Positions 25,419 through 51,716 of a DNA stretch of 64,000 nucleotides are shown here, in pieces. The notes under the pieces are model-generated. The model saw only the letters and a list, made by a program, of their open reading frames with translations. It was not told the origin of the DNA and ran no database searches. Position numbers and translations under genes: made by a program. The DNA is taken from positions 1 through 64,000 of the IMG/VR virus record IMGVR_UViG_3300048008_000449; one strand, written 5' to 3'. How positions within the stretch are numbered: the stretch's first letter is position 1; each line of letters opens with the position of its first letter.

Positions 25419-25447
25419 ATTATAGCAAGAACTCTTGGTAATGTCAA
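25419..25447 (-). promoter_or_regulatory. Consensus sigma70 promoter TTGACA-17-TATAAT with palindromic spacer CAAGA-NN-TCTTG
   Basis: Counted from the sequence: -35 at 25442-25447, -10 at 25419-25424, inverted repeat at 25426-25437. Confidence 0.85.
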
Positions 25448-35954: not shown

Positions 35955-36299
35955 TTACTCCTGTTCCGGTGGATGAAAATCGTCTTCATTTGGAAAATCA
36001 TAATACCCACTAGGGTCTGAAGTGTAGTATGGATCGTTATACATAGGATCGTCTTCACTTGTAACACCTTTAATTTCAGGAATGAAATGCATTAGTGTTG
36101 ACTCAACACCTTGTTTAAGTGTTTCAGTACTACTAGCACAACCACTACAACTTCCACTCATCTGAGTGTGAAGAATTCCTGTTTCTTCATTAAAGTTAAT
36201 TATATTAATTTGCCCACCATGTTGTGCTACATTTGGATTAATATATTCTTCCATAACTTTATCAATTTGTTCAAGCAACTCTTCTTTAGACTTACTCAT
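35955..36299 (-). CDS. NifU C-terminal domain protein (NfuA-like Fe-S carrier)
   Basis: I.P.V..HGG.I, MSGSCSGCASS..TLKQGVE (CxxC). Confidence 0.92.
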   Translation of the reverse strand: MSKSKEELLEQIDKVMEEYINPNVAQHGGQINIINFNEETGILHTQMSGSCSGCASSTETLKQGVESTLMHFIPEIKGVTSEDDPMYNDPYYTSDPSGYYDFPNEDDFHPPEQE

Positions 36300-36444
36300 A
36301 TTTGTACCTCGTTTTTCTAATATCCATCATATGGATACTACGTTCAATTTTATCTTCTTTACGTCTAGCAAATTTGTAACCAGCAAAAAAAGATAGTGCC
36401 ATTACTGCTCCAATAGCTAGCAAGTGCCATACTAAAAATGTCAT
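36292..36444 (-). CDS. 50-aa single-TM protein (absent from ORF track)
   Basis: MTFLVWHLLAIGAVMALSFFAGYKFARRKEDK..; GGAG RBS; overlaps both neighbours. Confidence 0.6.
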   Translation of the reverse strand: MTFLVWHLLAIGAVMALSFFAGYKFARRKEDKIERSIHMMDIRKTRYKYE

Positions 36445-36608
36445 ACTGTTTCTCCTTTGGTTATCACCTCTTCAATTCGGTGATGTGGATATGCCTTCGG
36501 GCGTATCTCTTTAATCTTTTCTAAATATTTCTGTGCTTCTGTTTCTGAATGAAATCGTGCAACAGAAATTTCGTCGTGTATTCTAGGTGTATAAATTATA
36601 TCGTACAT
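36441..36608 (-). CDS. Small hypothetical protein
   Basis: Start set at MYDII (36608) after an AAGG RBS. Confidence 0.55.
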   Translation of the reverse strand: MYDIIYTPRIHDEISVARFHSETEAQKYLEKIKEIRPKAYPHHRIEEVITKGETV

Positions 36609-36618
36609 ATTATTTCCT

Positions 36619-37182
36619 TTATAAAACGTGTTCATGTTCAATGATATGCCAATACATTAATGCTTCATAGCCAAACCATAATCCAAATACTAAAAATGCA
36701 AAACGTGTAACTTTAAATAACACATGAGCTGATACTTTATTTTTAATTAATGGAAACATTCCAACGACTATTGCAATTGCAACTGATGCAGACATCCAAC
36801 TGTATAGTGTATTGTTACTTGCCATAAACATAAACATAAATATCTCAGAACTTTCTCTAGCAAAAATAACAAAGATTGTAACTAATGCGGCGATACTAGT
36901 ACCTGATCCCATTTTTTGAATACTATCAACAATTTGCTGTCCCATTGTGTGTGAAGTAAAATATAAGTAAATCATCATTGCTGATAAAAACCCATACATT
37001 AACCATTCATAAGGTTCTAGCAAGTTTCCTAGTTGCCAACCTAATACAAATCCTACAATAATTCCAGCAATAGCAGATGCATACATGCTCCAATTTAATT
37101 TGATGAATGTTGTAATCATCAATGTTATAAACATTATCTCTAATGCTTCTCTTCCTACTAATATAAACGGTGCAATAAGCAT
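36619..37182 (-). CDS. FTR1/EfeU-family iron permease (short)
   Basis: Two RExxE motifs (GREALE, ARESSE) in a highly hydrophobic protein; start set at ATG 37182 after AGGAG. Confidence 0.8.
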   Translation of the reverse strand: MLIAPFILVGREALEIMFITLMITTFIKLNWSMYASAIAGIIVGFVLGWQLGNLLEPYEWLMYGFLSAMMIYLYFTSHTMGQQIVDSIQKMGSGTSIAALVTIFVIFARESSEIFMFMFMASNNTLYSWMSASVAIAIVVGMFPLIKNKVSAHVLFKVTRFAFLVFGLWFGYEALMYWHIIEHEHVL

Positions 37183-37183
37183 G

Positions 37184-37528
37184 TTAATCTCCTTCTCCTG
37201 GTTTTTCAGATAGTAATTCACGTTTGTTTGGTTTATCTTTCCATTCTGCAGCATCTGCAGGTGGATCTTTCATTGTAGTTATGTTTGGCCATTTTTCAGA
37301 CATATCGGTATTGACTTTCATCCAATAGGCTAGTTCTGTGCCTTCGATAGCACCATCAGCAACAATTGCATCTACTGGACATTCGGGTTCACATACACCA
37401 CAGTCAATACATTCATCTGGATTTATTACTAGAAAGTTTTCACCTTCATAGAAACAATCAACAGGACAAACTTCAACGCAGTCAGTATGTTTACATTTAA
37501 TACAATTTTCTGTTACTAAATATGTCAT
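37184..37528 (-). CDS. fdxA: 7Fe (3Fe-4S/4Fe-4S) ferredoxin, FdxA type
   Basis: [38 protein letters not shown]. Confidence 0.95.
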
Positions 37529-37825
37529 TTATACTCCTAAAATTAATCTTGTATCTTCGCTCATTTTATCTGGTCCAAAAGGCGGATCAAATGTTATTTT
37601 AACATCGCATGTTTCGACGTTATCTACTTTTGTTACTGCTTCGTGGACTTCCGCTATGATCTCGTCTGCGGCAGGACAGAACGCACTAGTTAATGTCATA
37701 ACAATATCAACGTGTGCTTTATTAATATTTATTTCATAAATTAAACCCAAATCATATACGTTTATACTGATCTCTGGGTCATATACTACTTTTAAATTTT
37801 CAATAATCTTTTCTTTATCTATCAT
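37529..37825 (-). CDS. DUF59 / SufT-like Fe-S cluster assembly protein
   Basis: VYDPEISINVYDLGLIY, MTLTSAFCP, TFDPP..P; start set at ATG 37825. Confidence 0.9.
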   Translation of the reverse strand: MIDKEKIIENLKVVYDPEISINVYDLGLIYEININKAHVDIVMTLTSAFCPAADEIIAEVHEAVTKVDNVETCDVKITFDPPFGPDKMSEDTRLILGV

Positions 37826-38802
37826 ATATTTTCTATTAGTGGTTTTATTCTTTTCTTTAATTGTTTCGCCCATAACACATGGCCTTTTTCATTAAGGTGA
37901 TTACATTTACATTGATGCGACATAGATATTGGTCCATCAACTTGTAGCCATCCTCCTTCATCGGATGTTCCATCAAGACAATTAAGTCGTTCTCTTATTG
38001 ATTGATCAAAGTTAATAAGGTGATCAAATAATGTACTAGTATCACCTAGCATCATTTTTCCAATCTTGTACCAAATACTTCTAGCATCAAGTGATTCCCA
38101 TAAAAATTCTACACCAGAACTGACAGCTATGTTTTTAATAGCTTCTATCTTTATCAGATCATCTAAACAAGCCGCTGGCCCCATTCCATCAAGTATGTGT
38201 ACTTGTTTATAAGTGTCTAATATTTTTTTAGCATATGCTATCTCACTAGGAGTTAATGGATGCTCTAAAGGTTGCCAAAACTTCTTTGTTACACCTCTTC
38301 TCCAATCCTGCATACTAGCAGATTGATATAATGCATTGCATATATCATTATCACCCCAATGATCAACTAGACCTCTGCCCCAACGTTCATTTAGTTGTAA
38401 ATAAGATTCCAATGAAGCTCTACCAAATTGATTATTACTACCTGTTTTTGGGTCAGTAAATACATAAGGTCTATTAGCAACAGAATTATAAGGTACTGCA
38501 CTTTGTCCATTAAGAAGTCTAGCTTCTAATACCATTAATTTACAGTTTGGATCTTTAAGTACACCTCTAGTAACCAACTCGTTTGTTGCTTGTAATAGTT
38601 CTGAGTTATTACACCCAGGTAAACCTATCTTAATACATTCTAATCCTAGTTGTTGAGCTACCTGTTCGTGAGCAGTTTTTCCACTTATTACGCCGTCCTC
38701 ATAATCGTCACAACATCCAAAAGTGTGACTAGTACCTAATGCTACCATAAACGGCTTATTAGGTACTACCAAAGGTGGTTTATTGTCTAGCTTTCTACTC
38801 AT
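37822..38802 (-). CDS. SGNH-hydrolase-like protein
   Basis: ALGTSHTFG, GLPGCNN, CNHLNEKGH. Confidence 0.6.
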   Translation of the reverse strand: MSRKLDNKPPLVVPNKPFMVALGTSHTFGCCDDYEDGVISGKTAHEQVAQQLGLECIKIGLPGCNNSELLQATNELVTRGVLKDPNCKLMVLEARLLNGQSAVPYNSVANRPYVFTDPKTGSNNQFGRASLESYLQLNERWGRGLVDHWGDNDICNALYQSASMQDWRRGVTKKFWQPLEHPLTPSEIAYAKKILDTYKQVHILDGMGPAACLDDLIKIEAIKNIAVSSGVEFLWESLDARSIWYKIGKMMLGDTSTLFDHLINFDQSIRERLNCLDGTSDEGGWLQVDGPISMSHQCKCNHLNEKGHVLWAKQLKKRIKPLIENI

Positions 38803-39257
38803 TATTGAGAACTTGGTGAGTAGATAGCACTGTTTGCACCATGCTCACTACACTCTGCTGATTCACACCAGCAACGATCATCACTCATTTCTCGTATAAG
38901 TTTATCTGCAAATGCCCATGCATGTTCTGCAAACTTTTCTGCACCAACTCCGTCAAACAATCTAATTTCTGCTAAGTTCATAGCATCAAGTTCTTTGAAC
39001 TTCTCAAGATGGGGATCGTTTTTGTCTAAGCATAATTTATGATCAAAATGATCTTCAAGCCATGCTTTCAAAGGTTTTAATCCTCCAAAGTCAACTGCCC
39101 AGTTTTTATTATCTAATTCACTGCATCCAAATGTAAATTTAAATGCTAATGAATAGCCATGAATCAAACTACAATGTGAATGATCAGCATGTGGTTGACG
39201 AAATACTGCACTTAGTCCAATATTATGTCCGTATGTTTTTGTGCTTAAATAAGCCAT
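38802..39257 (-). CDS. queD: 6-carboxy-5,6,7,8-tetrahydropterin synthase / 6-pyruvoyl-tetrahydropterin synthase (QueD-like)
   Basis: HSHCSLIHGY, VDFGGLK.LK.WL...FDH, E..ANSA. Confidence 0.85.
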   Translation of the reverse strand: MAYLSTKTYGHNIGLSAVFRQPHADHSHCSLIHGYSLAFKFTFGCSELDNKNWAVDFGGLKPLKAWLEDHFDHKLCLDKNDPHLEKFKELDAMNLAEIRLFDGVGAEKFAEHAWAFADKLIREMSDDRCWCESAECSEHGANSAIYSPSSQ

Positions 39258-39280
39258 ATCTTATCTCCTATATAATATCA

Positions 39281-39320
39281 GCGGCAGAATGTTTTGAGAG
39301 GGTTGACGCCTAAGACCTCA
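39281..39320 (-). ncRNA. Candidate preQ1-I-like riboswitch aptamer in the queD leader
   Basis: UGAGG-UCUUAGGCGUCAAC-CCUC-U-CAAAACAUUCUGCCGC: short P1 stem, loop starting UC and ending AAC, A-rich 3' tail, possible GGCG/UGCC pseudoknot; recognised by eye only. Confidence 0.45.
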
Positions 39321-39326
39321 TTTATG

Positions 39327-39533
39327 TTATGCGTTTTTTAAGTTAATAGCTGATAAACCTTTAGGTGTTTCAGCAACTTCAAAAACAAGTTCATCACCTT
39401 CATTAAGACTGTTAAGTCCTGATGCTGTTATAGCTGATGAATGCACGAATACGTCTTTTTCGCTATCGTGTCTAGTAATGAATCCGTAGCCTTTAGTAGC
39501 ATTGAACCATTTTACTTTTCCTGTTATAGTCAT
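39327..39533 (-). CDS. cspA: Cold-shock protein
   Basis: [24 protein letters not shown] (RNP1/RNP2). Confidence 0.95.
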
Positions 39534-39563
39534 ATTATCCTTTATTTGTTATTTAAGTACATG

Positions 39564-40313
39564 TTACACTAGTTCTGTAGTTTTGTCAAGAGCATATCTA
39601 ATGTGTTGCCTAACTACTTTTGCTGGTGTTGCATCTCGTTTATGCAATACTTTGTGATTATTATATACCAACAGTTGTTTTGGAGCCCAATTATGAGAAT
39701 ACATGTGTTGTTCTTTGTATATCTCTTTTTGTAATTGCGGTTCTAACTCTGTTTCCGTATATGCTTCGCTGTAAAAGTAATATGGGCCATAATCATCTTC
39801 CCATACTAAATCATGTGTCGCTCTATTAAACCTTCTCCAGGCTCTTTCTTGTAACTTACTTTTAAAATTATAAGGATACTCTTCCTGACTCATGTACTTC
39901 GTAATACTGTTGACGCATTTTACGCCTTTTGCTTGTTCTTTTAAACTGTCACTGCTATCTTTATATACGCCTTGCATATCTAAGTAGTGTGTTTGACTAG
40001 ATCCCTTGTCAGCACGTATACAATACAATCCAACAAATGGATGTATTGAATCGCTGTAAGCTCTATCTTGGTGCCAAAGCATATCTGTTGCATGATTTAG
40101 CTTTTCACCTTTTTCATCTTCAATACCAATTGTAACTTTTTTACGACCATACATATCTTGATCTAAAAGTTTACCAAACTTGTCAATGGTTTGTTCATCA
40201 GCACCTTCAATACATATGATACCATATGCACCATTTTGAAAATCATTAACTAAAGTAGGAGTTATATCATCTACTTTTATGTTATGTAAGAATTTATATT
40301 TTTCTATAGTCAT
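39564..40313 (-). CDS. TauD/TfdA-family 2OG-dependent dioxygenase
   Basis: LWHQDRAY (HxD), H.W..K.L..YNN.KVLHKR. Confidence 0.82.
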   Translation of the reverse strand: MTIEKYKFLHNIKVDDITPTLVNDFQNGAYGIICIEGADEQTIDKFGKLLDQDMYGRKKVTIGIEDEKGEKLNHATDMLWHQDRAYSDSIHPFVGLYCIRADKGSSQTHYLDMQGVYKDSSDSLKEQAKGVKCVNSITKYMSQEEYPYNFKSKLQERAWRRFNRATHDLVWEDDYGPYYFYSEAYTETELEPQLQKEIYKEQHMYSHNWAPKQLLVYNNHKVLHKRDATPAKVVRQHIRYALDKTTELV

Positions 40314-40857
40314 TTGTTAACGGATTCTCTCCTCTCCATATTATATGTTGCCAGCATTCGTCACCATCACATGGTGCAGTTTGCCATTCATAATCTTCTA
40401 GTACCCAATCTTTGTACTTACAATTATAATTTAATCCTTTATGTAGATTACGCATCACTTTAAAATTTCCATGTTCTCTACTTATAAAGTGTTTGGTTAA
40501 GCCTTGAGATATTGCATAATCTACTTGTTGATCTGCATGTTCTGCGGTAAATGTACTTAGCCCTTTTACATGGTACTTATGAATACGTAGTCCTTTTTGT
40601 GCTACATTAAGTTTTTTACTTGTATAATATCTACTTAATACTCTAACACCGTTATTATAAAAATCTCTCGTTCTTGCTACACTACCTGCAATTGGATCGC
40701 CCTCATCATCCCATGTTACACTGTAACATAAATTTTCTTCACTGCTTAAACTTTCTATCTCATAATTATGAGGCATTCTATTCAATGAATCTTTTAATGA
40801 TTCTTCAAATAATGTAATAAGTTCTAGAGGGATCCAATCAGTAGTTTCTGTATGCAT
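40294..40857 (-). CDS. GNAT-like acyltransferase-fold protein
   Basis: PIAGSV..NGVRVLSRYY pattern; weak. Confidence 0.4.
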   Translation of the reverse strand: MHTETTDWIPLELITLFEESLKDSLNRMPHNYEIESLSSEENLCYSVTWDDEGDPIAGSVARTRDFYNNGVRVLSRYYTSKKLNVAQKGLRIHKYHVKGLSTFTAEHADQQVDYAISQGLTKHFISREHGNFKVMRNLHKGLNYNCKYKDWVLEDYEWQTAPCDGDECWQHIIWRGENPLTNDYRKI

Positions 40858-41798
40858 TATTCTTCTTTAAGAAATTTATAATTAAACGCAATACGATAAA
40901 GTAATCTATCACCTTTGACTGCATTACGTGCATGGTAACTCATAAACTGATCGTTAATAATTAAGTCACCTTCTTTCCAATGATGATGGTACATATACTG
41001 TGGTTGAAATAGATGTTTATGCAATGCATCCAATAATGGTTTTGCTTCTTGCAATGTAATTTCTTCACCAGTTTCTTTATTACGTAATTTACGCATTACA
41101 CCAAAGTGTCCTGTATAAATTGCTTTAGGACTATTGTCCTGATCCCACCAGCCTGGTATTGTTCTAAATGGATGTTGTACAATTAATGGTTTCCAACTAC
41201 CACGTACAGGATTAAGTTCGTTTTTACCTTTACGTCCTGTGCTTTTTAAATTACCTTCAAATATAGCAAGTAATTCATCCATGCCTTTGTTTAAACTGTC
41301 GTCATCAAATTGGTATATGCTATTGTCTTTATCAAACTGTGCCCAATATTCAAAATTATCAGCAGTATCTTTTAGCTCTTGTGGTAAGTCTTCGTATGCT
41401 TGCTTGCTGTTTAGATAACTTGTAACAACTTGTTCACCTGGACGAACACAATAGAAAGCAATACAACTTTCAATAACATGTTTCCAATGACGCCAGTTGC
41501 CGTTGTTGTGCCAACCTAATTCGCTTTCAGGAAATAATCCAACAAACTTTCCATCTTTGTCTTTTTCATTTGTAACACGGCTAATACCTGGATAATCTTT
41601 GTGTTCAAAGTAAACATCAAATCCTGCTTTCTTTGGACTATATAGTTTTCCAATGCTAGTAGCACCATCTAATAATTCTTGTTCGTGTAAATTAGCACCT
41701 GGTATATACGCAATAACATCTTTTGGTTGATTACGGCATACTTCATGCCAGTTATTTGGATCTCTCATATCCAAATTGTATTCTACGGGTTTAAACAT
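40857..41798 (-). CDS. TauD/TfdA-family 2OG-dependent dioxygenase
   Basis: ELGWHNNG, HHWKEGDLIINDQFMSYHARN..GDRLLYRI. Confidence 0.85.
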   Translation of the reverse strand: MFKPVEYNLDMRDPNNWHEVCRNQPKDVIAYIPGANLHEQELLDGATSIGKLYSPKKAGFDVYFEHKDYPGISRVTNEKDKDGKFVGLFPESELGWHNNGNWRHWKHVIESCIAFYCVRPGEQVVTSYLNSKQAYEDLPQELKDTADNFEYWAQFDKDNSIYQFDDDSLNKGMDELLAIFEGNLKSTGRKGKNELNPVRGSWKPLIVQHPFRTIPGWWDQDNSPKAIYTGHFGVMRKLRNKETGEEITLQEAKPLLDALHKHLFQPQYMYHHHWKEGDLIINDQFMSYHARNAVKGDRLLYRIAFNYKFLKEE

Positions 41799-41800
41799 TT

Positions 41801-42523
41801 TTACCTCTTTATTAATTTAATAAACCAAGCACCTGGGTCCCATTGCCACAGTGTCTTGCCGATACGCCAGTTTCTAGAATCTTCGTGATGGTTTTTATGC
41901 CATCCTTCTCCAGCGGTTAATATATTTGCAACCCAACTATTTTTAGGGTTACCATTTTCTGTGTGTGGGATTAAATTTACAAGTCCATATCCATGGAATG
42001 CAAATACTACTGGCATACAAAATCCAAATAAAAATAACATAGGATTTATGAACAACAATAATATTGCTATTAGTGTTATTAGTAAAAAATAGTTATCATG
42101 GAAGAATTTTGTATCCGGAGTAATTAATCCTTTAATCATTTTTCTTTCTATAGTAACATCGTTGCCCCATTGACTAGTATATACCTTAAAGAAACCTTTA
42201 AGTGTTGGACTATGTGGGTCTTTGTTAGTGTCAGTATAAGCATGGTGCATTCTATGTGTGCTAGCCCATGTTAATACAGGACCAGGATTTGCGAACATTC
42301 CTAGTACCTGTACATAATATCTATACCAATTTGGTGCTTCAAACGATCCATGACTAAAGTATCTATGATACCCTGCACTGATTGCTGAAGCGGCAATAAA
42401 TTGCCACCAAATGAAACTTAAGATTAGCATCCAAAGTTCACCATATATAAATGCTGGTATGAGCATTAAGTGGCAGATTGCATGTATTGAAAGAAGTTTA
42501 TGTGTTGTTGATATCTTCTTCAT
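41801..42523 (-). CDS. Membrane fatty acid desaturase (delta-9 acyl-CoA/acyl-lipid type)
   Basis: His boxes HRYFSH, HRMHH and GEGWHKNHH; DPHSP; WDP. Confidence 0.93.
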   Translation of the reverse strand: MKKISTTHKLLSIHAICHLMLIPAFIYGELWMLILSFIWWQFIAASAISAGYHRYFSHGSFEAPNWYRYYVQVLGMFANPGPVLTWASTHRMHHAYTDTNKDPHSPTLKGFFKVYTSQWGNDVTIERKMIKGLITPDTKFFHDNYFLLITLIAILLLFINPMLFLFGFCMPVVFAFHGYGLVNLIPHTENGNPKNSWVANILTAGEGWHKNHHEDSRNWRIGKTLWQWDPGAWFIKLIKR

Positions 42524-42546
42524 GCTTTACCTTTATAAATTAGTTG

Positions 42547-42819
42547 TTAGATAGTTTCTTCTGAAATAACAGTTGAAGTATAGTTTCTATCTTCTATTTC
42601 TGATGCAAACGCTTCTCTGTGAGCAGTAGCGTTAGCTTCGTCAATATAAGTTAAAACAATACGTACACCGTTACCAGCTTCATTCACGTCCATAGTTCCA
42701 GCAGTAATATACTGATCATTATACAATCCGCATCTACCATGTTCTGCAATCCATTCTTCAATGTTTGCATAAGTATTTGAATTGTTAGTGACTAGATCTG
42801 CAGTTTTTCTAAAAGCCAT
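42547..42819 (-). CDS. 90-aa acidic protein at the head of the desaturase/TauD operon
   Basis: Start MAFRKT at 42819 after a strong GAGGAG RBS; no enzyme motif. Confidence 0.7.
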   Translation of the reverse strand: MAFRKTADLVTNNSNTYANIEEWIAEHGRCGLYNDQYITAGTMDVNEAGNGVRIVLTYIDEANATAHREAFASEIEDRNYTSTVISEETI

Positions 42820-42852
42820 TTGTTTTCTCCTCACATCTTCTGATGTATTTCT

Positions 42853-42919
42853 ATTATATTACATTATTTATGACATTATGTCAATCAGATCTTGACAGAT
42901 AAATAAGTATGTATATAAT
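42853..42919. promoter_or_regulatory. Divergent promoter region with inverted TTGACA boxes, each followed by an ATAAATA motif
   Basis: (+) TTGACA 42892-42897, 16 nt, TATAAT 42914-42919, with ATAAATA inside the spacer; (-) TTGACA 42879-42884 with ATAAATA at 42865-42871. Confidence 0.65.
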
Positions 42920-42925
42920 AGTAAC

Positions 42926-43438
42926 ATGCTAGTAAAACAAGATCCAGGTAAAAGAGACATAGAATTCTTCGGTTATATATGCGAAGATATGGGCTATATG
43001 AACAATGCTAATTTAGATGCAATGAAATATGATTGGTGTAAGAAGCACAACGGCGAATGGTGGGCGGCTTATCACAATGATGTAATTGTATCAATGGCGG
43101 GTTGTCATAAGTTTCATGATGGTCATAGAATGTTGTTCAGGGGAGTACAAACAATGCCTGCACAGACTGGATTAAGTAAAAATCATATGACTAGTATTCC
43201 ATGGAAATGGATATTACCTGAGCAAATAAAATGGGCTCAAAGTTCAGAAGAACAGCCTGCATATATTACAACAAATGTTGAGAATGATGCAAGTGGAAAA
43301 ATGAATAGAACAGATAGATTATTTCATCTGTTAGCTAAACAAGGAATAGTAAGTTTTTATACTGAAGAAGAAATATACGGAACAAAACAATCAGTATGGA
43401 AATTAAACTTAGAAAAATATTATGAAACATTGGTTTGA
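42926..43438 (+). CDS. GNAT-like acyltransferase-fold protein
   Basis: WWAAYHNDVIVSMAGCH..RMLFRG pattern; weak. Confidence 0.4.
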   Translation: MLVKQDPGKRDIEFFGYICEDMGYMNNANLDAMKYDWCKKHNGEWWAAYHNDVIVSMAGCHKFHDGHRMLFRGVQTMPAQTGLSKNHMTSIPWKWILPEQIKWAQSSEEQPAYITTNVENDASGKMNRTDRLFHLLAKQGIVSFYTEEEIYGTKQSVWKLNLEKYYETLV

Positions 43439-43712
43439 TTGGAAACATTTAAGAGTAGCAGAATATCTAAATGGAACAAAACGTGATAATGCTATTGTGC
43501 TTTACTTTAAGCACATGTACATAGGTTTTAGAGAAGCAGGTAAACAGTTGTTTATGTGTATTGCTAGTATCATACATGCAATATTTCCTCCATTATTTAA
43601 TTTTAAATTATTAGAAATGGTAATTAATCAAGCAATAGGATTACACAAGTTTTTGCCTCAACATCCAGACTGGAAGAAATTAAAAGATGAACTTAATAAA
43701 AATAATAAATGA
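43422..43712 (+). CDS. Small protein resembling DUF6356
   Basis: YF.HM..F..A..L....AS.IHA.FP.LF pattern recalled for that family. Confidence 0.5.
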   Translation: MKHWFDWKHLRVAEYLNGTKRDNAIVLYFKHMYIGFREAGKQLFMCIASIIHAIFPPLFNFKLLEMVINQAIGLHKFLPQHPDWKKLKDELNKNNK

Positions 43713-44364
43713 TGGCACAACAATTAATACTAGCGGAACTACTGGTCCAAGTAAACCAATTTGGCAAAGTGCTGAAAAGATATACTTTGCAAATAGAGCC
43801 GCAGTAAAATGTCAGAAGTTAAATAAGTTTAGTAAAGTATATACAGTATGTACATTAGATCACGCAGGTGGATTATTTGCACAAACAATACCAGCTATAG
43901 CAGTTGATGCAGACGTATATATAGAACCATTTAATGCATTTACTTGGGTTAAAAAAATTATGGACTATACACATTCGCACCTAACACCTAATATGGCTAG
44001 AGCTGTTATGGCTACTAAAACATTTAGTAAACTTGATTTAACTGGCATAACAATTATGTGTGGAAGTGATAGAGTGCATAGTAGTATTATTAAAGCATTT
44101 ATAGCACAAGGTGCTACGTTTATTGCCAATTGGGGCATGAGTGAAGTAGGACCAGTTGCTATTAACAAAACATTTAACAAAGGTGATGTTGTAGATCATA
44201 CAGAAAGTATTATGGGAGATACAACCTATTGTGAAACTAAAATTGTAGATGGAGAGTTATATGTCAAAGGATATATTTGTGTATATGATGATTGGTTTGC
44301 AACAGGCGACTTAGTAGAATACAAGGATGATATTTACTGGTACCTAGGGAGAAAAAATGCGTAA
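43687..44364 (+). CDS. Truncated AMP-binding (ANL superfamily) adenylating enzyme
   Basis: TSGTTG.SK P-loop, NWGMSEVGP, FATGDL, GR; only 225 aa, with no C-terminal subdomain. Confidence 0.78.
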   Translation: MNLIKIINDGTTINTSGTTGPSKPIWQSAEKIYFANRAAVKCQKLNKFSKVYTVCTLDHAGGLFAQTIPAIAVDADVYIEPFNAFTWVKKIMDYTHSHLTPNMARAVMATKTFSKLDLTGITIMCGSDRVHSSIIKAFIAQGATFIANWGMSEVGPVAINKTFNKGDVVDHTESIMGDTTYCETKIVDGELYVKGYICVYDDWFATGDLVEYKDDIYWYLGRKNA

Positions 44365-45112
44365 GCTAGAAAACAAACATGTATTTGTTAGCTTTGAACC
44401 AGGAGCAAGTGGACATAGACTAGCAAGAGTATTAGCTACCATGCCATGTATGCATTGGTATAGCTGTGAAGAAAATGGAATTAATCCATGGAATGTTGGC
44501 AAAGTAAATGATTATAGTGGACAACGTAAAACAAGTAGATACCATTTTGATCGTATAACACCAAAAGGTAAATTGCCGCCAACACATGATTATGTAGAAA
44601 AGTATCTTCCTAATGAGAAACAATATTATAAATTGTTTGATCAATTATTTAAAGAGAATGGTGGAGAAGATATTATCAATGATGGTAAGCGTGTGTTATA
44701 TTGTACACATAGTATGCCTAATAAGATATTAGAATACTTTCCTAACAGTATTGTTTTTAATATTATACATGATCCAAAAACTATAACAGATCGTTACATG
44801 CAGACTACTGCAAAGTTTCCTGGATATGTAAAGCATTATGGTGTAGTGCCAGAAGATAATGAATATTTACAATTTTTAAAAATATTACATTCAAGAAAGA
44901 ATGATTTAACTGTAGCAGACATATGGGCATTTGAACGTAAGAAAAAATTCTATTCAGAAGCATTAGAAGAAAAACTTAAAAAAGAAATATATGCTAAGAT
45001 GTTTTCAAATAGTATTTTTAGGAAAGCAATAGACGATCCTAGAGTGTTTAACACTACAACAAAGTTTAATTATAAAGAAATAAAAAGGTATTTAGATGAT
45101 AGACTTCAGTAA
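44357..45112 (+). CDS. Hypothetical protein, sulfotransferase/P-loop-like N-terminus
   Basis: VFVSFEPGASGHRLARVL resembles a 5'-PSB loop; weak. Confidence 0.4.
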   Translation: MRKLENKHVFVSFEPGASGHRLARVLATMPCMHWYSCEENGINPWNVGKVNDYSGQRKTSRYHFDRITPKGKLPPTHDYVEKYLPNEKQYYKLFDQLFKENGGEDIINDGKRVLYCTHSMPNKILEYFPNSIVFNIIHDPKTITDRYMQTTAKFPGYVKHYGVVPEDNEYLQFLKILHSRKNDLTVADIWAFERKKKFYSEALEEKLKKEIYAKMFSNSIFRKAIDDPRVFNTTTKFNYKEIKRYLDDRLQ

Positions 45113-45800
45113 CGTAATTTTTATAACTGGTGCACCTGGTAGTAAATGGAGTGCGGTTAGTTGGGTGTTAAGTGAATCACCATTTCTTAATGTAAGTATT
45201 ACAGATAGAACAGAAGAAAGATTAATGGTACACGATGCCATCTATGGTGGAGTAAGACACACGGGTGTTTACTTTGGACCAGGAAATGAACTTGGAAAGC
45301 AATTTCATAAAATTAATACACTTACAAGACAAGAAGTTTTTGATGAAATTAAACAAGCATGGGCAGAATGGGATGAAGAAAAAACTTACATTGTACGTTG
45401 TCATCAATTCATTTATAATTGGGATTGGATGATTGAAAACTTTCCAGAAGCAAAGTTTGTTACTGTATCCAGGCCTCCTGAAATGTGTGTACAAGGTTGG
45501 ACTAGTGTAGGTGGAATTGATACTCCATATCCACATTATAAAGAGTTTTACAAAACACAAGAAAATGCAATAGAACAAATTAAACTAGAATCAAGATTAG
45601 CACATAAAGCATTTCATGATCATCACATGGATGTTCATGTTGCAAGTCCTGGTCATTTCTTTAAAGAATTTTTATTAGATCCAGAACCAGAAACTGGACT
45701 AGATAGATATATTAAACATTTAGAAGGATATAATTGGGGTGCTAAAGATCCGCTTATGCAGTTAAAACATGACGTGTTGATCGGCTACCTAAATTTCTAA
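45096..45800 (+). CDS. Hypothetical protein, sulfotransferase/P-loop-like N-terminus
   Basis: IFITGAPGSKWSAV; later AKFVTVSRPP; weak. Confidence 0.45.
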   Translation: MIDFSNVIFITGAPGSKWSAVSWVLSESPFLNVSITDRTEERLMVHDAIYGGVRHTGVYFGPGNELGKQFHKINTLTRQEVFDEIKQAWAEWDEEKTYIVRCHQFIYNWDWMIENFPEAKFVTVSRPPEMCVQGWTSVGGIDTPYPHYKEFYKTQENAIEQIKLESRLAHKAFHDHHMDVHVASPGHFFKEFLLDPEPETGLDRYIKHLEGYNWGAKDPLMQLKHDVLIGYLNF

Positions 45801-46602
45801 TAACATCAACAACTTTATCTTTTTCAAAGTTAAATTGACACGATCCAATTTGGATATGATCATTTCTTAAATCTTCCCAAGCATCAATAACATAACTTCT
45901 CCAAGAAGACTTGTGGTCTAAAAATTCATCACCTTCACTGAATCTCATAAATTTCCAATCAGTATCTGTATTGATATGTTTCCATTGCCATTCGTGATCG
46001 TAATGATGTGTTCTTATACAATCATTTTCAGTTTTTGGAAACGCTGAATATGTTTCTATTCCTAGTTTAATTGGAACACCTGTACTCCACATTTGAAACT
46101 CTTTATATGCTTCGTACTTGGTTGTTATTTTAAAACATTCACCTGGTGGAATAAATGCAGGTTCATCGAAATGAGTATATATACATTTAATACTTTCAAA
46201 TCCACATAACCATAATGCAATAAGTCTTCCACTACCTGGATGTACTCTATATCTATTAAACCAAGGTTCGTGTATAATTTGTGGATAGAATCTTAATTCT
46301 TCGTATTGTATACATTCAGTAAGATAAAATATTTTACTAACATCTTCCATAACATCTCTATCTTGCATATCATTATTTGTTACTTCGGATTCGTGGAATT
46401 CTAAGATTTGTTCAAATGGTAAACTTCTAAAATATTCTAACATCCTAACAATTTCGTACATAGGGTTATGTAGTATATCCCAATTGACGTAACTAGACGC
46501 AAGATAACCGCCCTTACGCTCGTGATCGTTTATCCAATGTTGTAACATATAGTCTTGTGCAAGATCTTTTAAACCTGGGTAATATCGTGGGTCTACTGGC
46601 AT
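45754..46602 (-). CDS. Hypothetical protein
   Basis: Long ORF with a VHPGSGR motif; start set at ATG 46602. Confidence 0.65.
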   Translation of the reverse strand: MPVDPRYYPGLKDLAQDYMLQHWINDHERKGGYLASSYVNWDILHNPMYEIVRMLEYFRSLPFEQILEFHESEVTNNDMQDRDVMEDVSKIFYLTECIQYEELRFYPQIIHEPWFNRYRVHPGSGRLIALWLCGFESIKCIYTHFDEPAFIPPGECFKITTKYEAYKEFQMWSTGVPIKLGIETYSAFPKTENDCIRTHHYDHEWQWKHINTDTDWKFMRFSEGDEFLDHKSSWRSYVIDAWEDLRNDHIQIGSCQFNFEKDKVVDVIRNLGSRSTRHVLTA

Positions 46603-47300
46603 AGTATACCAGCCATATTGGTATGCCATTCTTCACCAGGATGATCATCATCTCTAGCTTTAGAGAATTCTTCTTTTGATAATGTGTTTATTGTACATTG
46701 ATGTAATTCTATATTATTAGCTTTACAAAAATATTCTACTAACTGTTTGTTCTTTTGATAATTATATTCGTCTGCTTTATCATTCATTAATGTTGCATAC
46801 GAACTTATCCACGTTGGTGATTTTAATTCTTGTCTAATTGCTTGTTTTGATAAATTTTTAAACTTATGAAGACCGCCGTCATCTTCTATATGTTCTCGTC
46901 TTTCTTTAAAAGTCCACATCACATATATATGTTTTGGATTAAATGTTTTACAATAAGAAATAGCTAGCCTTGCTATTTTATCATTACTAGCACCATTCTG
47001 TCCAAGATTTGTTACGTCTATTAACTGAGGCCAGCAAGTGTTTACTCCATAACCAAATGTATAACTACAACCAAATGCCGCATCAACGTTTTCATCAGGA
47101 ACTATTTCACCTCTATAACGCCAATCATTAATATAATATTCAACACTATCTTCAGTATAGCCATTGGCTATTCCTTGTTCTTTTTCTCCGTCATCTAACC
47201 AATTTCTTTTACCAGGATTATCATGGCCTAGTGTAAAAACACTAAACCATTTGTCTGTAAGATATCGAGATTCTTGAAACTGTTCTGGAAGTCTTTTCAA
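46593..47300 (-). CDS. SGNH-hydrolase-like protein
   Basis: AFGCSYTFG, NLGQNGASND.I, DDDHPG..WH. Confidence 0.7.
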   Translation of the reverse strand: MKRLPEQFQESRYLTDKWFSVFTLGHDNPGKRNWLDDGEKEQGIANGYTEDSVEYYINDWRYRGEIVPDENVDAAFGCSYTFGYGVNTCWPQLIDVTNLGQNGASNDKIARLAISYCKTFNPKHIYVMWTFKERREHIEDDGGLHKFKNLSKQAIRQELKSPTWISSYATLMNDKADEYNYQKNKQLVEYFCKANNIELHQCTINTLSKEEFSKARDDDHPGEEWHTNMAGILCQ

Positions 47301-47963
47301 TTATTGTCCCCAACGATAGAATATATGAGTACCTACTTGTGTAATCCTTGCCATACCTCTATCATTAATCCAATTTGGTTTTACATAATCTGCATGATAA
47401 TGTGTTGCACCTTCAGTAATGTCTACTGTAAATGTTTGGTCACCATATACACCAGTACTTATGTCAAGTACTAACTTAGCAATATCTGTAGCAAGATAAA
47501 CTGCTTCTTCGTTGTACATTATATCAGCTTTACCATCACAGTACCAACTGAATTGACATTTGTTTTTGATAGGAAAATATACTGCATCATTTTCATCTGG
47601 AGTCTGCTTAGTTTTCCAACTTTCTTTAACAGGTCCTTGATGTACTACACCACAAACTGTATCTGGATAACGTGGATCTGAAACACGATTCATAACAACC
47701 ATTGTAGTTGCATACATTCCTGCATAACCATCGTTACGTGCTTCAAAATACATATTTTCAACTAGACATTGTAAATCGTATTTGTCATATGGACCTTCAA
47801 GGAAAGTATCCATTAAGTATGCATCCGAGTCAAGTACTTCGTATTCTGGAAGTACACCTGTTGTATCAGCTTTAGCTGGCCATATACCAGTTGCAAAAAA
47901 GCCTATTGACATAACAACTGCTACGTTCATAAAAGTTCCGATAATGTTAGCTAGTACTCTCAT
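47301..47963 (-). CDS. Cell wall hydrolase (SleB / Hydrolase_2 family) with N-terminal anchor
   Basis: CL..N.YFEAR, VVMNRV...YP.TVCGVV.Q, CQFSWYCDG, GATHYHA.YV.P.W, G.HIFYR. Confidence 0.92.
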   Translation of the reverse strand: MRVLANIIGTFMNVAVVMSIGFFATGIWPAKADTTGVLPEYEVLDSDAYLMDTFLEGPYDKYDLQCLVENMYFEARNDGYAGMYATTMVVMNRVSDPRYPDTVCGVVHQGPVKESWKTKQTPDENDAVYFPIKNKCQFSWYCDGKADIMYNEEAVYLATDIAKLVLDISTGVYGDQTFTVDITEGATHYHADYVKPNWINDRGMARITQVGTHIFYRWGQ

Positions 47964-47997: not shown

Positions 47998-48026
47998 ATT
48001 ATAGCAAGATATCTTGGTGTTGTCAA
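47998..48026 (-). promoter_or_regulatory. Consensus sigma70 promoter TTGACA-17-TATAAT with a perfect CAAGATATCTTG palindrome in the spacer
   Basis: -35 at 48021-48026, -10 at 47998-48003, palindrome at 48005-48016. Confidence 0.85.
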
Positions 48027-51690: not shown

Positions 51691-51716
51691 AAAAACCCAG
51701 TAAATACTAGGCTTTT
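51691..51716 (-). terminator. Possible terminator after the DNA polymerase gene
   Basis: AAAAGCCTAGTA-TT-TACTGGGTTTTT imperfect hairpin with T-run at the polymerase stop. Confidence 0.45.

What the first reader, a model, noticed from the sequence alone, without database searches (positions are those of the whole stretch)
37822..47300. Second tailoring island: TauD x2, desaturase, GNAT-like x2, minimal ANL, sulfotransferase-like x2, SGNH x2
Seen: two divergent operons around 42.85-42.92 kb encoding acyl-activating, desaturating, hydroxylating and transferase-like enzymes. Inference: a pathway making a modified acyl group (activated, desaturated, hydroxylated, transferred, possibly sulfated) that may be attached to the product of the rSAM cluster or to virion or host-surface molecules.
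Basis: partly seen in the sequence, partly recalled or inferred. Interest (0 to 1): 0.6.

Follow-up and report, generated by a model that had tools for sequence, protein, structure and literature searches.

The report
Phage accessory enzyme cassettes beside rSAM cluster
A large marine phage carries two back-to-back early operons of acyl-activating, acyl-transferring, oxidising and sulfotransferase-like enzymes; in related phages these travel as separate cassettes at the end of a big radical-SAM gene cluster, and the core pair (a stripped-down adenylating enzyme plus a tiny membrane protein) also occurs in SAR11-type ocean bacteria.

Summary
Pfam supports two TauD dioxygenases, a Delta9-type membrane desaturase and a 225-aa ANL core. 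That core starts at the P-loop, ends at the hinge, and lacks both the N-terminal ~170 residues and the C-terminal domain. Predicted structures support a GNAT fold for the 170-aa protein (strongly) and a sulfotransferase/P-loop fold for the 251-aa protein (moderately). The second GNAT-like and second sulfotransferase-like calls rest on profile comparisons. The two SGNH calls rest on motifs only.

Divergent sigma70-like promoters sit at 42.86-42.92 kb. A third unit (cell-wall hydrolase, SGNH-like, 291 aa) has its own promoter.

This is not one fixed pathway. Related contigs show two separable cassettes: GNAT-DUF6356-ANL-sulfotransferase-like, and desaturase-TauD-GNAT-like-TauD. Each recurs directly downstream of the last rSAM gene of the neighbouring cluster.

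The DUF6356/short-ANL pair also lies in SAR11, OM43 and gammaproteobacterial chromosomes (short ANL also in SAR116).

The substrate is unknown. Acyl activation and transfer onto the rSAM cluster's product is the best-supported reading, at moderate confidence.

The parts
42892..42919 (+). Perfect sigma70-type promoter-like site (TTGACA-16-TATAAT), 6 nt upstream of the GNAT/ANL operon
   Evidence: It is one of 7 perfect sites in the window against 0.25 expected. Another lies at 975-1003, ahead of the rSAM cluster.
42856..42884 (-). Promoter-like site (10 of 12 matches) facing the orf95/desaturase operon
   Evidence: On its own this is a consensus match only.
42926..43438 (+). 170-aa GNAT-fold protein (fam3), first gene of the plus operon
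   Evidence: Model pLDDT 89.7. Foldseek hits 94 PDB chains at E<=1e-3; every listed top match is a GNAT. VIA Z 12.5 to PA3270-type GNATs, NatB and RimI. Pfam Acetyltransf_1 only E 0.013, below cut-off. 24 metagenomic relatives, none with a name beyond 'hypothetical protein'.
43422..43712 (+). 96-aa DUF6356 protein with one hydrophobic segment and three invariant histidines; overlaps the ANL start
   Evidence: Pfam DUF6356 E 3e-5, at the gathering score. Hydropathy segment 43-61. H9, H31 and H52 are invariant in phage and bacterial members. It lies immediately upstream of the short ANL in SAR11, OM43 and gammaproteobacterial chromosomes.
43687..44364 (+). 225-aa truncated ANL (adenylate-forming) core running from the P-loop to the hinge
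   Evidence: Pfam AMP-binding 53.3 bits, profile positions 170-378 of 384. Best NCBIfam matches are the middle third of long-chain fatty-acid-CoA ligases. Motifs A3, HAGG, NWGM(S/T)E, TGD and GR are conserved in 18 aligned members. More than 595 clusters, all about 225-246 aa.
44357..45112 (+). 251-aa sulfotransferase/P-loop-fold protein (fam1)
   Evidence: Model pLDDT 92.7. Foldseek top hits are the CurM ST domain, Schistosoma and Alicyclobacillus sulfotransferases, and TPST2. Atlas by shape: every named row is Sulfotransfer_3, TM 0.55-0.58. VIA Z 8-9.5 does not separate sulfotransferases from NMP kinases or MiaA.
45096..45800 (+). 234-aa sulfotransferase-like protein (fam4); a paralog lies at genome 185415-186131
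   Evidence: Pfam Sulfotransfer_3 E 0.006, below cut-off. hhalign to fam1 E 1.1e-4, prob 57%, aligning the P-loop and the following strand motif. Paralog found.
42547..42834 (-). 95-aa ORF of unknown function, first gene of the minus operon; it travels with the ANL cassette
   Evidence: Homologs lie beside the ANL cassette in L005, L007 and L018. Covered by exact contigs from all four metatranscriptome runs laid. No family match.
41801..42523 (-). 240-aa Delta9 (SCD/DesC)-type membrane desaturase
   Evidence: Pfam FA_desaturase E 9e-11. Human SCD1 4zyo E 2e-12, with the HxxxxH, HxxHH and HxxHH boxes aligned. Two hydrophobic hairpins.
40857..41798 (-). 313-aa TauD/TfdA-family dioxygenase whose metal motif reads H-x-N instead of H-x-D
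   Evidence: Pfam TauD E 1.6e-20. Aligned to WHAD of 6l86. WH(N/S)NGN is conserved in 6 homologs down to 33% identity, including phage Mosig.
40294..40857 (-). 187-aa protein, distant relative of the 170-aa GNAT-fold family
   Evidence: hhalign A7 vs A1: E 4e-4, prob 34%, 73 columns. Always lies between the two TauD genes.
39564..40313 (-). 249-aa TauD/TfdA dioxygenase with canonical H-x-D...H...R
   Evidence: Pfam E 4.8e-19. PDB 5j92 alignment.
39327..39533 (-). 68-aa cold-shock domain protein
   Evidence: Pfam CSD E 2e-24. In L125 and L131 its homolog sits between DUF6356 and the ANL.
38802..39257 (-). 151-aa PTPS/QueD-like protein
   Evidence: Pfam PTPS E 1e-13. No QueC or GTP cyclohydrolase I in the record.
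37822..38802 (-). 326-aa SGNH-like protein (motif level only)
   Evidence: Conserved GTSHTxG, GLxGxNN and CxCxHxNxxG blocks. hhalign to the 235-aa family aligns blocks I and III, E 0.0023. No Pfam, PHROG or NCBIfam match.
35955..37873 (-). Iron and Fe-S support genes downstream in the same orientation: NifU-like (35955-36299), FTR1-like (36619-37254), ferredoxin (37184-37528), FeS_assembly_P (37529-37873)
   Evidence: The NifU homolog lies between the anchor rSAM gene and the GNAT in L125, L128 and L131.
45754..47963 (-). Third, convergent unit: cell-wall hydrolase (47301-47963), 235-aa SGNH-like (46593-47300), 291-aa rare protein (45754-46629). A perfect promoter-like site lies at 47998-48026.
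   Evidence: Hydrolase_2 E 1.5e-20. SGNH blocks GCSYTFG, GASND and DxDH. Atlas lead to Lipase_GDSL, score 0.93. The 291-aa family has 26 representatives in 1.84 billion proteins. Promoter site. The unit is conserved with L005 and L018.
23454..24629 (+). Last rSAM gene of the upstream cluster (1-24.6 kb). It serves as the anchor after which both cassettes sit in relatives.
   Evidence: Pfam Radical_SAM E 8e-14. Synteny.

Best explanation
The region is a mosaic accessory island of a large marine T4-like phage. It holds three units with sigma70-like promoter sites and two separable enzyme cassettes that belong functionally to the neighbouring multi-rSAM/SPASM cluster.

Cassette A is GNAT-fold protein, DUF6356, short ANL, and two sulfotransferase-fold proteins.
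- The ANL core keeps every ATP-binding motif of the N-terminal domain.
- It lacks the C-terminal domain that ANL enzymes need for thioester formation.
- It therefore most likely forms an acyl-adenylate at the membrane, anchored by or working with DUF6356.
- A GNAT-fold transferase then probably passes the acyl group to an amine, and the P-loop/sulfotransferase-fold proteins decorate the product.

Cassette B is a Delta9-type di-iron desaturase, TauD (H-x-N), a GNAT-like protein, and TauD (H-x-D). It supplies O2-dependent desaturation and hydroxylation plus a second transferase. The adjacent ferredoxin, NifU, FeS_assembly_P and FTR1-like genes would provide electrons and iron.

The acceptor is most likely the peptide or metabolite made by the rSAM cluster.

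Shown here: gene content, folds, promoter-like sites, cassette mobility, linkage to the rSAM cluster, cellular homologs. Inferred: all chemistry, the order of steps, the substrate, and that the promoter-like sites mean early expression.
For: - Families and folds.
- ANL motif conservation and length across more than 595 clusters.
- All plus-operon genes overlap by 8-26 nt.
- The same class of perfect sigma70-like promoter precedes the rSAM cluster (975-1003) and cassette A (42892-42919).
- Cassette A lies directly after the anchor rSAM gene in L006, L007, L125, L128 and L131. In the last three the NifU homolog is inside the cassette; the CSD homolog is too in L125 and L131.
- Cassette B lies directly after the anchor in L020. 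Desaturase homologs lie within 10 kb of it in L120 and L122-L124.
- The desaturase sits beside TauD-like, 187-aa-like and rSAM genes in L021, and in the same island as TauD and rSAM genes in pelagiphage Mosig.
- The whole island is collinear in a relative at 60-90% identity (L018/L036).
- Each cassette carries a member of the same odd GNAT-like family.
- Exact short contigs from four marine metatranscriptome runs lie on genes of both operons.
Against: - The two cassettes occur without each other (L005, L020).
- The ANL occurs alone next to UvsY/UvsW in L009-L012.
- In SAR11, OM43 and gammaproteobacterial chromosomes the ANL occurs with DUF6356 but without a GNAT or sulfotransferase-like gene; SAR116 chromosomes carry the short ANL without those genes.
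- No carrier protein, AMP-binding_C or APS kinase was found in the record.
- An ANL without the C-terminal lysine domain may adenylate poorly.
- The GNAT-fold protein shows no recognisable acyl-CoA pyrophosphate-binding motif (by inspection).
- The 251-aa fold does not separate sulfotransferase from nucleotide kinase by Z-score.
- RNA-library contigs can come from contaminating DNA.
- Anchor-gene loci also exist with neither cassette nearby (L116, L118, L121, L126, L127, L129, L130).
Confidence: 0.45

Rival explanations
1. The genes are independent auxiliary metabolic genes with no shared pathway. The desaturase adjusts host membrane fluidity as cyanophage vFADs do. The cold-shock protein, PTPS and TauD enzymes each act on host metabolism. 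The DUF6356/ANL pair is a borrowed host gene pair doing whatever it does in SAR11-type cells. Adjacency reflects only a hypervariable dumping ground.
For: - DesC-like desaturases carried by cyanophages were shown active on C16 lipids in yeast (PMC5776448).
- Hypervariable accessory islands with rSAM cassettes are described in pelagimyophages (PMC7029224).
- The cassettes are separable.
- TauD2 sits alone beside UvsW in L037 and L038.
- The ANL sits alone in L009-L012.
- ANL and DUF6356 have chromosomal homologs in another context.
- Phage and cellular ANLs interleave on the tree.
Against: - The same cassettes attach repeatedly to the same anchor rSAM gene in contigs only 74-78% identical in that gene.
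- Gene overlaps within operons are tight.
- The desaturase-TauD-187aa-TauD order is kept down to 55-93% identity, and partly at 26-48%.
- GNAT-like paralogs occur in both cassettes.
Confidence: 0.25
2. The island remodels host membrane lipids. SGNH-like enzymes free or move acyl chains. The membrane-tethered ANL re-activates fatty acids. GNAT-like N-acyltransferases make aminolipid-type head groups. The desaturase, the TauD enzymes and the Asp/Asn-hydroxylase-like enzymes desaturate and hydroxylate them, and the sulfotransferase-like proteins sulfate them.
For: - The best ANL family matches are long-chain fatty-acid ligases.
- DUF6356 has a hydrophobic segment and the desaturase is an integral membrane acyl desaturase.
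- SGNH-like motifs are present.
- Sigma70-like promoter sites are compatible with early, host-directed action.
- From general knowledge, as a lead only: ornithine-lipid pathways use a GNAT-like N-acyltransferase (OlsB) and an Asp/Asn-hydroxylase-family hydroxylase (OlsC), and SAR11 makes phosphorus-free aminolipids.
Against: - No match of the GNAT-fold proteins to OlsB-type families at E<=0.1.
- A dozen rSAM-SPASM enzymes, a class typical of peptide modification, are not explained.
- The SGNH calls are unverified.
- No lipid-synthesis genes were identified in the island.
Confidence: 0.2
3. The enzymes modify phage virion proteins, such as tail fibres, or the host surface for recognition. This would parallel the host recognition cluster of pelagimyophages.
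For: - In phage Mosig the analogous island (rSAM, TauD, desaturase, acetyltransferase, Asp/Asn hydroxylases) abuts tail-fibre genes.
- L021 has a tail-fibre-neighbour homolog nearby.
- The host recognition cluster is described in PMC7029224.
- The top structural neighbours of the GNAT model include protein N-terminal acetyltransferases.
Against: - In this genome the island lies next to replication genes (DNA polymerase at 51715-54408), not tail fibres.
- It is preceded by sigma70-like rather than late-type promoter sites.
- No structural genes lie in the island.
Confidence: 0.1

Closest known systems
ANL superfamily acyl-CoA synthetases and fatty acyl-AMP ligases (FadD, MenE; Pfam PF00501)
   Same: The P-loop (A3), HxGG, GxGxTE-like, TGD and GR-hinge motifs are conserved. 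The best family matches are long-chain fatty-acid ligases.
   Different: The protein is only 225 aa. It lacks the first ~170 residues and the whole C-terminal subdomain with the A10 lysine. No such domain was found elsewhere in the record. It always pairs with or neighbours a small DUF6356 protein in bacteria and in many phages. No PDB relative is detectable by sequence.
GNAT acyltransferases: structural neighbours PA3270, RimI/NatB, NcdE acyltransferase domain. From memory only: GNATs that lipidate ribosomal peptides.
   Same: The full GNAT topology is predicted with high confidence: Z 12.5, 151 of 170 residues aligned.
   Different: Sequence identity is 5-16%. It falls below the Pfam threshold. 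There is no evident Q/RxxGxG/A CoA-binding motif. It has its own invariant set (R68, FRG, D121-S-G, Q155, W158). The donor and acceptor are unknown.
PAPS-dependent sulfotransferases (CurM/OLS ST domains, TPST, Sulfotransfer_3)
   Same: The fold ranks closest to these in Foldseek and in Atlas shape search. P-loop-like and following-strand motifs lie in equivalent places.
   Different: TM is only 0.38-0.58. Z-scores tie with NMP kinases and MiaA. The loop lacks the usual Lys/Arg-Ser-Gly-Thr pattern. No APS kinase was found in the record. Cofactor binding is untested.
Cyanophage DesC-like lipid desaturases (vFAD; PMC5776448) and stearoyl-CoA desaturase
   Same: The three histidine boxes and two hydrophobic hairpins are present. 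It is phage-borne.
   Different: It is short (240 aa). In the phage collection it matched only pelagiphage Mosig (31%) and an Acinetobacter phage (27%). It is embedded in a TauD/GNAT-like block that attaches to rSAM clusters, rather than standing alone.
Hypervariable accessory islands (host recognition cluster) of pelagimyophages and cyanomyophages with rSAM cassettes (PMC7029224); the Mosig island
   Same: These are mosaic islands, variable cassette by cassette, with rSAM, Asp/Asn hydroxylase, TauD, desaturase and acetyltransferase genes.
   Different: Here the island lies beside the replication module in a much larger phage. CheckV rates the 205-kb record 56% complete. The DNA polymerase is nearest to 350-490-kb jumbo phages. 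The island carries the ANL/DUF6356/sulfotransferase-like cassette, which was not found in the cultured-phage collection searched.
TauD/TfdA Fe(II)/2-oxoglutarate dioxygenases
   Same: Both proteins pass the Pfam threshold. The distal His and Arg are present.
   Different: One clade has a conserved H-x-N in place of the H-x-D/E carboxylate ligand. From memory, carboxylate loss is the hallmark of Fe/2OG halogenases (H-x-A/G), but I know of no described Asn variant.

Membership tests
ANL superfamily (PF00501) | Score above the Pfam gathering threshold | tested here: met
   53.3 bits against 29.9
ANL superfamily (PF00501) | Core motifs A3 (S/T-S-G-T-T-G-x-P-K), A5 (G-x-G-x-T-E type), A7 (T-G-D), A8 (G-R hinge) | tested here: met
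   Invariant or nearly so in 18 aligned phage members
ANL superfamily (PF00501) | Two-domain architecture with a ~110-aa C-terminal subdomain carrying the A10 lysine | tested here: not met
   The ORF ends 3 residues after the GR hinge. Family members are all about 225-246 aa. No AMP-binding_C in the record.
ANL superfamily (PF00501) | Full N-terminal domain (profile positions 1-170) | tested here: not met
   The match starts at profile position 170. The upstream 170-aa ORF is a GNAT fold, not the missing part.
ANL superfamily (PF00501) | Carboxylate adenylation activity | not testable with these tools
   Needs an ATP-PPi exchange or hydroxamate assay
GNAT superfamily | GNAT fold (beta1-alpha1-alpha2-beta2-4-alpha3-beta5-alpha4-beta6-7) | tested here: met
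   170-aa protein: Foldseek prob 1.0; VIA Z 12.5, rmsd 3.1 A, 151 residues aligned
GNAT superfamily | Pfam Acetyltransf family score above threshold | tested here: not met
   16.2 bits against 20.7. The 187-aa protein has no hit.
GNAT superfamily | Acyl-CoA pyrophosphate-binding motif Q/R-x-x-G-x-G/A at beta4-alpha3 | tested here: inconclusive
   By inspection of A1 and the model, a long low-confidence loop (residues 76-90) replaces the usual motif
GNAT superfamily (187-aa protein) | Homology to a protein with a demonstrated GNAT fold | tested here: inconclusive
   hhalign E 4e-4 but probability 34%, 73 columns.
Sulfotransferase (PAPS-dependent) | Sulfotransferase fold | tested here: inconclusive
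   251-aa protein: Foldseek top hits and all named Atlas shape hits are sulfotransferases. VIA Z 8-9.5 ties them with NMP kinases and MiaA.
Sulfotransferase (PAPS-dependent) | Pfam Sulfotransfer family score above threshold | tested here: not met
   234-aa: 17.3 bits against 27. 251-aa: no hit.
Sulfotransferase (PAPS-dependent) | 5'-phosphosulfate-binding loop with catalytic Lys/Arg, and the 3'-phosphate-binding motif | tested here: inconclusive
   Loops FEPGxxGH and TGAPGSKWS, and strands IIHDP and SRPPE, lie in the expected places but are not canonical
Sulfotransferase (PAPS-dependent) | PAPS binding and sulfuryl transfer | not testable with these tools
   No APS kinase in the 205-kb record. 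The host could supply PAPS.
SGNH/GDSL hydrolase | Conserved blocks I (G-x-S-x-x-x-G), III (G-x-N-D) and V (D-x-x-H) | tested here: met
   235-aa: GCSYTFG, GASND, DxDH. 326-aa: GTSHTxG, GLxGxNN, H in CxCxHxNxxG without the Asp.
SGNH/GDSL hydrolase | Significant family or structure match | tested here: not met
   No Pfam, PHROG or NCBIfam hit at E<=0.1. No PDB profile hit. Only an Atlas feature lead at 0.93, which the tool itself flags as probably unreliable. Not folded.
TauD/TfdA dioxygenase | Pfam threshold | tested here: met
   69.7 and 74.6 bits against 27
TauD/TfdA dioxygenase | 2-His-1-carboxylate facial triad | tested here: not met
   Met in 39564-40313 (WHQD...H). Not met in 40857-41798, where a conserved Asn replaces the carboxylate.
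Delta9 (SCD/DesC) membrane desaturase | Three histidine boxes, hydrophobic hairpins, Pfam threshold | tested here: met
   HRYFSH, HRMHH and HKNHH aligned to SCD1. 42.4 bits against 29.7. Hydropathy.
Delta9 (SCD/DesC) membrane desaturase | Regiospecific desaturation of an acyl-lipid or acyl-CoA | not testable with these tools
   Needs heterologous expression and fatty-acid analysis, as in PMC5776448

The most novel reading that the evidence does not exclude
The short ANL and DUF6356 form a previously undescribed minimal two-part adenylating system. One part is an ANL core stripped of both its N-terminal subdomain and its C-terminal lid. The other is a small histidine-rich membrane protein. The DUF6356/short-ANL pair is found in SAR11, OM43 and gammaproteobacterial chromosomes, the short ANL also in SAR116, and both in many marine T4-like and jumbo phages. 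Phages have combined it with a private GNAT-like family and sulfotransferase-fold proteins. The combination would build an acylated, and possibly sulfated and oxidised, derivative of the product of a multi-rSAM pathway early in infection.
Probability: 0.2. Interest if true: 0.8.

Novelty: new variant of a known kind. Interest (0 to 1): 0.55.

Why it matters
Marine T4-like phages devote tens of kilobases to hypervariable islands full of rSAM, 2OG-oxygenase and transferase genes. Their products are unknown.

This work shows the islands are built from defined cassettes that dock at one end of an rSAM cluster. That gives concrete, small gene sets (4-5 genes) to express together.

The short ANL with DUF6356 is abundant: more than 595 clusters at 90% identity. 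It is shared between some of the ocean's most numerous bacteria and their likely phages, and it is uncharacterised. An ANL working without either terminal subdomain would change what is considered the minimal adenylating unit.

The conserved H-x-N TauD clade is a further testable oddity of Fe/2OG chemistry.

Tried and rejected
- The 170-aa ORF as the missing N-terminal part of the ANL: rejected, since it folds as a GNAT.
- A trans-encoded ANL C-domain, a carrier protein, or PAPS synthesis in the genome: none found in the 205-kb record. The record is only about 56% complete, so this is not proof of absence.
- PTPS as part of a 7-deazaguanine pathway: no QueC or FolE found.
- Binding of DUF6356 to the ANL: complex prediction gave no verdict (score 0.00). 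This counts neither for nor against.
- Megablast of the region against cultured phages: no match. tblastn of the ANL against the same collection: no match.
- PDB sequence or profile searches for the GNAT family, both sulfotransferase-like families, the ANL and the 235-aa SGNH-like family: nothing significant.
- PHROGs and NCBIfam on the unknown proteins: nothing beyond the ANL.
- hhalign of two genes of the third island (genome 186.9-188.5 kb) against the ANL and GNAT profiles: no relation.
- 291-aa protein: the exhaustive search found only 26 representatives. Only weak ParB_N/Noc similarity, E 0.07-0.11. Function left open.
- Viral-contig scans for the two SGNH-like proteins returned only close relatives, so no deep profiles could be built.

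Full report
CONTEXT. The window is the first 64 kb of a 204,772-bp IMG/VR virus record that CheckV rates 56% complete. GC content is about 33%. Its family-B DNA polymerase (51715-54408) is closest, at 44-48% identity, to 350-490-kb jumbo myoviruses. Relatives of the region carry T4-type gp23, UvsY and UvsW genes. The stretch occurs in many seawater metagenomes. Window positions 1-24.6 kb (+ strand) hold at least twelve radical-SAM genes, most with a SPASM domain. That cluster also has an aminotransferase-like, an Asp/Asn beta-hydroxylase-like and a nitroreductase-like gene.

WHAT IS IN 37.8-47.3 KB. There are sixteen ORFs in three units.

Unit 1 is on the minus strand, read from 42834 downwards:
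- a 95-aa ORF;
- a 240-aa Delta9-type desaturase;
- a 313-aa TauD;
- a 187-aa protein;
- a 249-aa TauD;
- a cold-shock protein;
- PTPS;
- a 326-aa protein.

Unit 2 is on the plus strand from 42926: a 170-aa protein, a 96-aa DUF6356, the 225-aa ANL, a 251-aa protein and a 234-aa protein. Every junction overlaps by 8-26 nt.

Unit 3 is on the minus strand from 47963: a cell-wall hydrolase, a 235-aa protein and a 291-aa protein. It converges on unit 2.

PROMOTERS. The 91-bp gap at 42835-42925 holds a perfect TTGACA-16-TATAAT site facing unit 2 and a 10/12 site facing unit 1. Perfect sites of this kind occur 7 times in the window against 0.25 expected. One lies at 975-1003, ahead of the rSAM cluster. 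Another lies at 47998-48026, ahead of unit 3. By analogy with T4-like early promoters (general knowledge), this suggests host-RNA-polymerase, early expression. That is an inference.

FAMILY AND FOLD TESTS.
- Both TauD proteins and the desaturase pass Pfam thresholds.
- The desaturase aligns all three histidine boxes with human SCD1 at E 2e-12. It has two hydrophobic hairpins.
- The ANL matches only profile positions 170-378 of 384, and only the middle third of fatty-acid-CoA ligases.
- An alignment of 18 ANL members shows the P-loop, HAGG, NWGM(S/T)E, TGD and GR motifs conserved. The protein ends at the hinge.
- The 170-aa protein, folded with 22 homologs (pLDDT 89.7), is a GNAT: Foldseek prob 1.0; VIA Z 12.5, rmsd 3.1 A, 151 residues aligned.
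- The 187-aa protein aligns to that family by hhalign at E 4e-4, prob 34%.
- The 251-aa protein (pLDDT 92.7) is nearest to sulfotransferases in Foldseek (CurM ST E 8e-4; TPST2). In the Atlas shape search all named rows are Sulfotransfer_3. VIA Z-scores of 8-9.5 tie these with NMP kinases and MiaA.
- The 234-aa protein has a sub-threshold Sulfotransfer_3 hit and aligns with the 251-aa family at E 1e-4.
- The two SGNH calls rest on conserved blocks I, III and V, a mutual hhalign of blocks I and III and one Atlas lead. No library or PDB match supports them.

SYNTENY.
- The whole island is collinear at 60-90% protein identity in a 138-kb contig (L018/L036), and at about 90% identity in L003.
- The 184-kb contig of L005 keeps units 2 and 3 and the 95-aa ORF, but lacks the desaturase/TauD/PTPS/CSD block.
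- In L020 the order is anchor rSAM gene (74% identical to 23454-24629), desaturase, TauD, 187-aa protein, TauD, all on one strand.
- In L006 and L007, and in L125, L128 and L131 (one on a 307-kb contig), the same anchor is followed on the same strand by GNAT, (DUF6356), ANL and the 251-aa homolog. The 234-aa homologs are adjacent. In L125, L128 and L131 a NifU homolog sits inside the run; in L125 and L131 a cold-shock homolog does too.
- Desaturase homologs lie within 10 kb of the anchor in L120 and L122-L124.
- In L021 the desaturase sits beside TauD-like, 187-aa-like and rSAM genes, and in cultured pelagiphage Mosig it lies in the same island as TauD and rSAM genes.
- Other anchor loci have neither cassette within the fetched stretch.
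- In this genome an 18-kb minus-strand block separates the rSAM cluster from cassette A.

I read these facts as two mobile cassettes that dock at the 3' end of the rSAM cluster.

THE ANL PAIR IS ALSO CELLULAR.
- The short ANL family has more than 595 clusters at 90% identity, all about 225-246 aa. No cultured-phage hit was found.
- A scan of species-representative genomes found 62 loci. About 50 share only the ANL with this phage and look chromosomal. They include a complete Pelagibacter genome (L098), other SAR11, SAR116, OM43/Methylophilaceae and Gammaproteobacteria.
- In SAR11 the conserved order is SDR, DUF6356 (82-85 aa), short ANL, glucose/sorbosone dehydrogenase. A photolyase-related gene lies next to it.
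- DUF6356 directly precedes the ANL in SAR11, OM43 and some Gammaproteobacteria, as it does in the phage. It has three invariant histidines and one hydrophobic segment.
- On a quick ML tree, phage and bacterial ANLs interleave, and starred branches force at least 4 label changes.
- A second DUF6356 gene heads a third small island at genome 185.4-188.7 kb. That island ends in a paralog of the 234-aa protein.

EXPRESSION. Exact 151-264-nt contigs from four marine metatranscriptome runs (three studies) lie on the desaturase, the 95-aa ORF, the GNAT, DUF6356, the ANL and both sulfotransferase-like genes. None lies on 45736-46700. Such contigs cannot show strand or level and may derive from DNA, so this is weak support for transcription.

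HOW IT MOST LIKELY WORKS. Shown: the parts list, the folds, the cassette structure and the linkage to the rSAM cluster. Inferred:
- The ANL core binds ATP and a carboxylate and makes an acyl-adenylate.
- Without a C-terminal domain it cannot perform the domain-alternation step that makes thioesters (established ANL mechanism, general knowledge). The adenylate would therefore be consumed by a partner.
- The co-transcribed GNAT-fold protein is the obvious candidate to transfer the acyl group to an amine.
- The P-loop/sulfotransferase-fold proteins would modify the product.
- Cassette B adds di-iron and Fe/2OG oxidations and a second transferase. The ferredoxin, NifU, FeS_assembly_P and FTR1-like genes would supply electrons and iron to these enzymes and to the rSAM enzymes.
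- The acceptor is most likely the rSAM cluster's product.

I put about 0.45 on this reading. The rivals are independent AMGs (0.25), host-lipid remodelling (0.2) and virion or surface modification (0.1). They are set out in their own sections.

COMPARISON AND NOVELTY. Hypervariable islands with rSAM cassettes are described for pelagimyophages (PMC7029224). DesC-like desaturases are described for cyanophages (PMC5776448). Four things appear undescribed in the library searched:
- the doubly truncated ANL with its DUF6356 partner, shared with SAR11-type cells. DUF6356 occurs in one unrelated paper, and one phrase search found no paper on an ANL lacking the C-terminal domain;
- the private GNAT-like family present in both cassettes;
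- the docking of both cassettes at one rSAM anchor gene;
- the conserved H-x-N TauD clade.

I therefore rate it a new variant of a known kind.

LIMITS. The record is incomplete. Only two proteins could be folded. All chemistry is inferred. 

Noticed in passing
window 40857-41798 (-): This TauD clade, including the phage Mosig homolog at 33% identity, has a conserved WH(N/S)NGN. An Asn sits where the Fe-binding Asp/Glu of the H-x-D/E motif should be. The neighbouring TauD (39564-40313) is canonical.
   Followed up: partly
window 975-1003, 9799-9828, 25419-25447, 34803-34830, 42892-42919, 47998-48026, 57485-57513: Seven perfect TTGACA-N15-18-TATAAT sites against 0.25 expected by shuffling. Several sit just upstream of operon starts (rSAM cluster, GNAT/ANL operon, cell-wall hydrolase unit). 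They are probably a class of early phage promoters.
   Followed up: partly
window 35955-37873 (-): An iron and Fe-S support set: NifU-like, FTR1-like iron permease fragment, a ferredoxin with DUF3470, and FeS_assembly_P. In L125, L128 and L131 the NifU homolog lies between the last rSAM gene and the GNAT.
   Followed up: partly
window 1-24629 (+): Most rSAM enzymes of the cluster have the SPASM domain at the N-terminus, ahead of the rSAM core. This is a permuted order. One pair looks split into separate ORFs: rSAM at 1059-1739 and SPASM at 1726-2079.
   Followed up: no
genome 184982-188720 (locus L109): A third related island. On the minus strand it has a second DUF6356 gene (E 2.5e-8), three unknown ORFs (192, 317 and 269 aa) and a paralog of the 234-aa sulfotransferase-like protein. 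A NUDIX gene lies beside it. Homologs of these genes adjoin the ANL cassette in L007, L103 and L107.
   Followed up: partly
window 45754-46629 (-): The 291-aa protein belongs to a very small family: 26 representatives among 1.84 billion proteins. It has an invariant R-x-H-P-G-S-G-R motif. Similarity to ParB N-terminal domain and Noc is only weak (E 0.07-0.11).
   Followed up: partly
window 42547-42834 (-): The 95-aa ORF has no family match. It accompanies the ANL cassette rather than the desaturase block in L005, L007 and L018. It is the part most consistently covered by metatranscriptome contigs. It could be a small partner or a substrate protein.
   Followed up: no
L098 7099-9765 (Pelagibacter complete genome) and about 25 other SAR11 loci: A conserved chromosomal operon: SDR, DUF6356, short ANL, glucose/sorbosone dehydrogenase. 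It lies divergent from a photolyase-related gene. Its function in SAR11 is unknown.
   Followed up: partly
L025 6387-8681: In a distant phage contig, a 330-aa ANL-like protein (24% identity to the short ANL) lies two genes upstream of a desaturase homolog (34%). This is an independent ANL-desaturase neighbourhood.
   Followed up: no
window 38802-39257 and 39327-39533 (-): A stand-alone PTPS/QueD-like gene, with no QueC or GTP cyclohydrolase I in the record, lies next to a cold-shock protein gene. The cold-shock homolog is inserted between DUF6356 and the ANL in L125 and L131.
   Followed up: partly
L009-L012, L037, L038: In other T4-like marine phages the short ANL, or the H-x-N TauD, sits alone next to the UvsY/UvsW genes: the ANL between a gp3-like gene and UvsY, the TauD one ORF upstream of UvsW. 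The same insertion spot hosts different single accessory genes.
   Followed up: no
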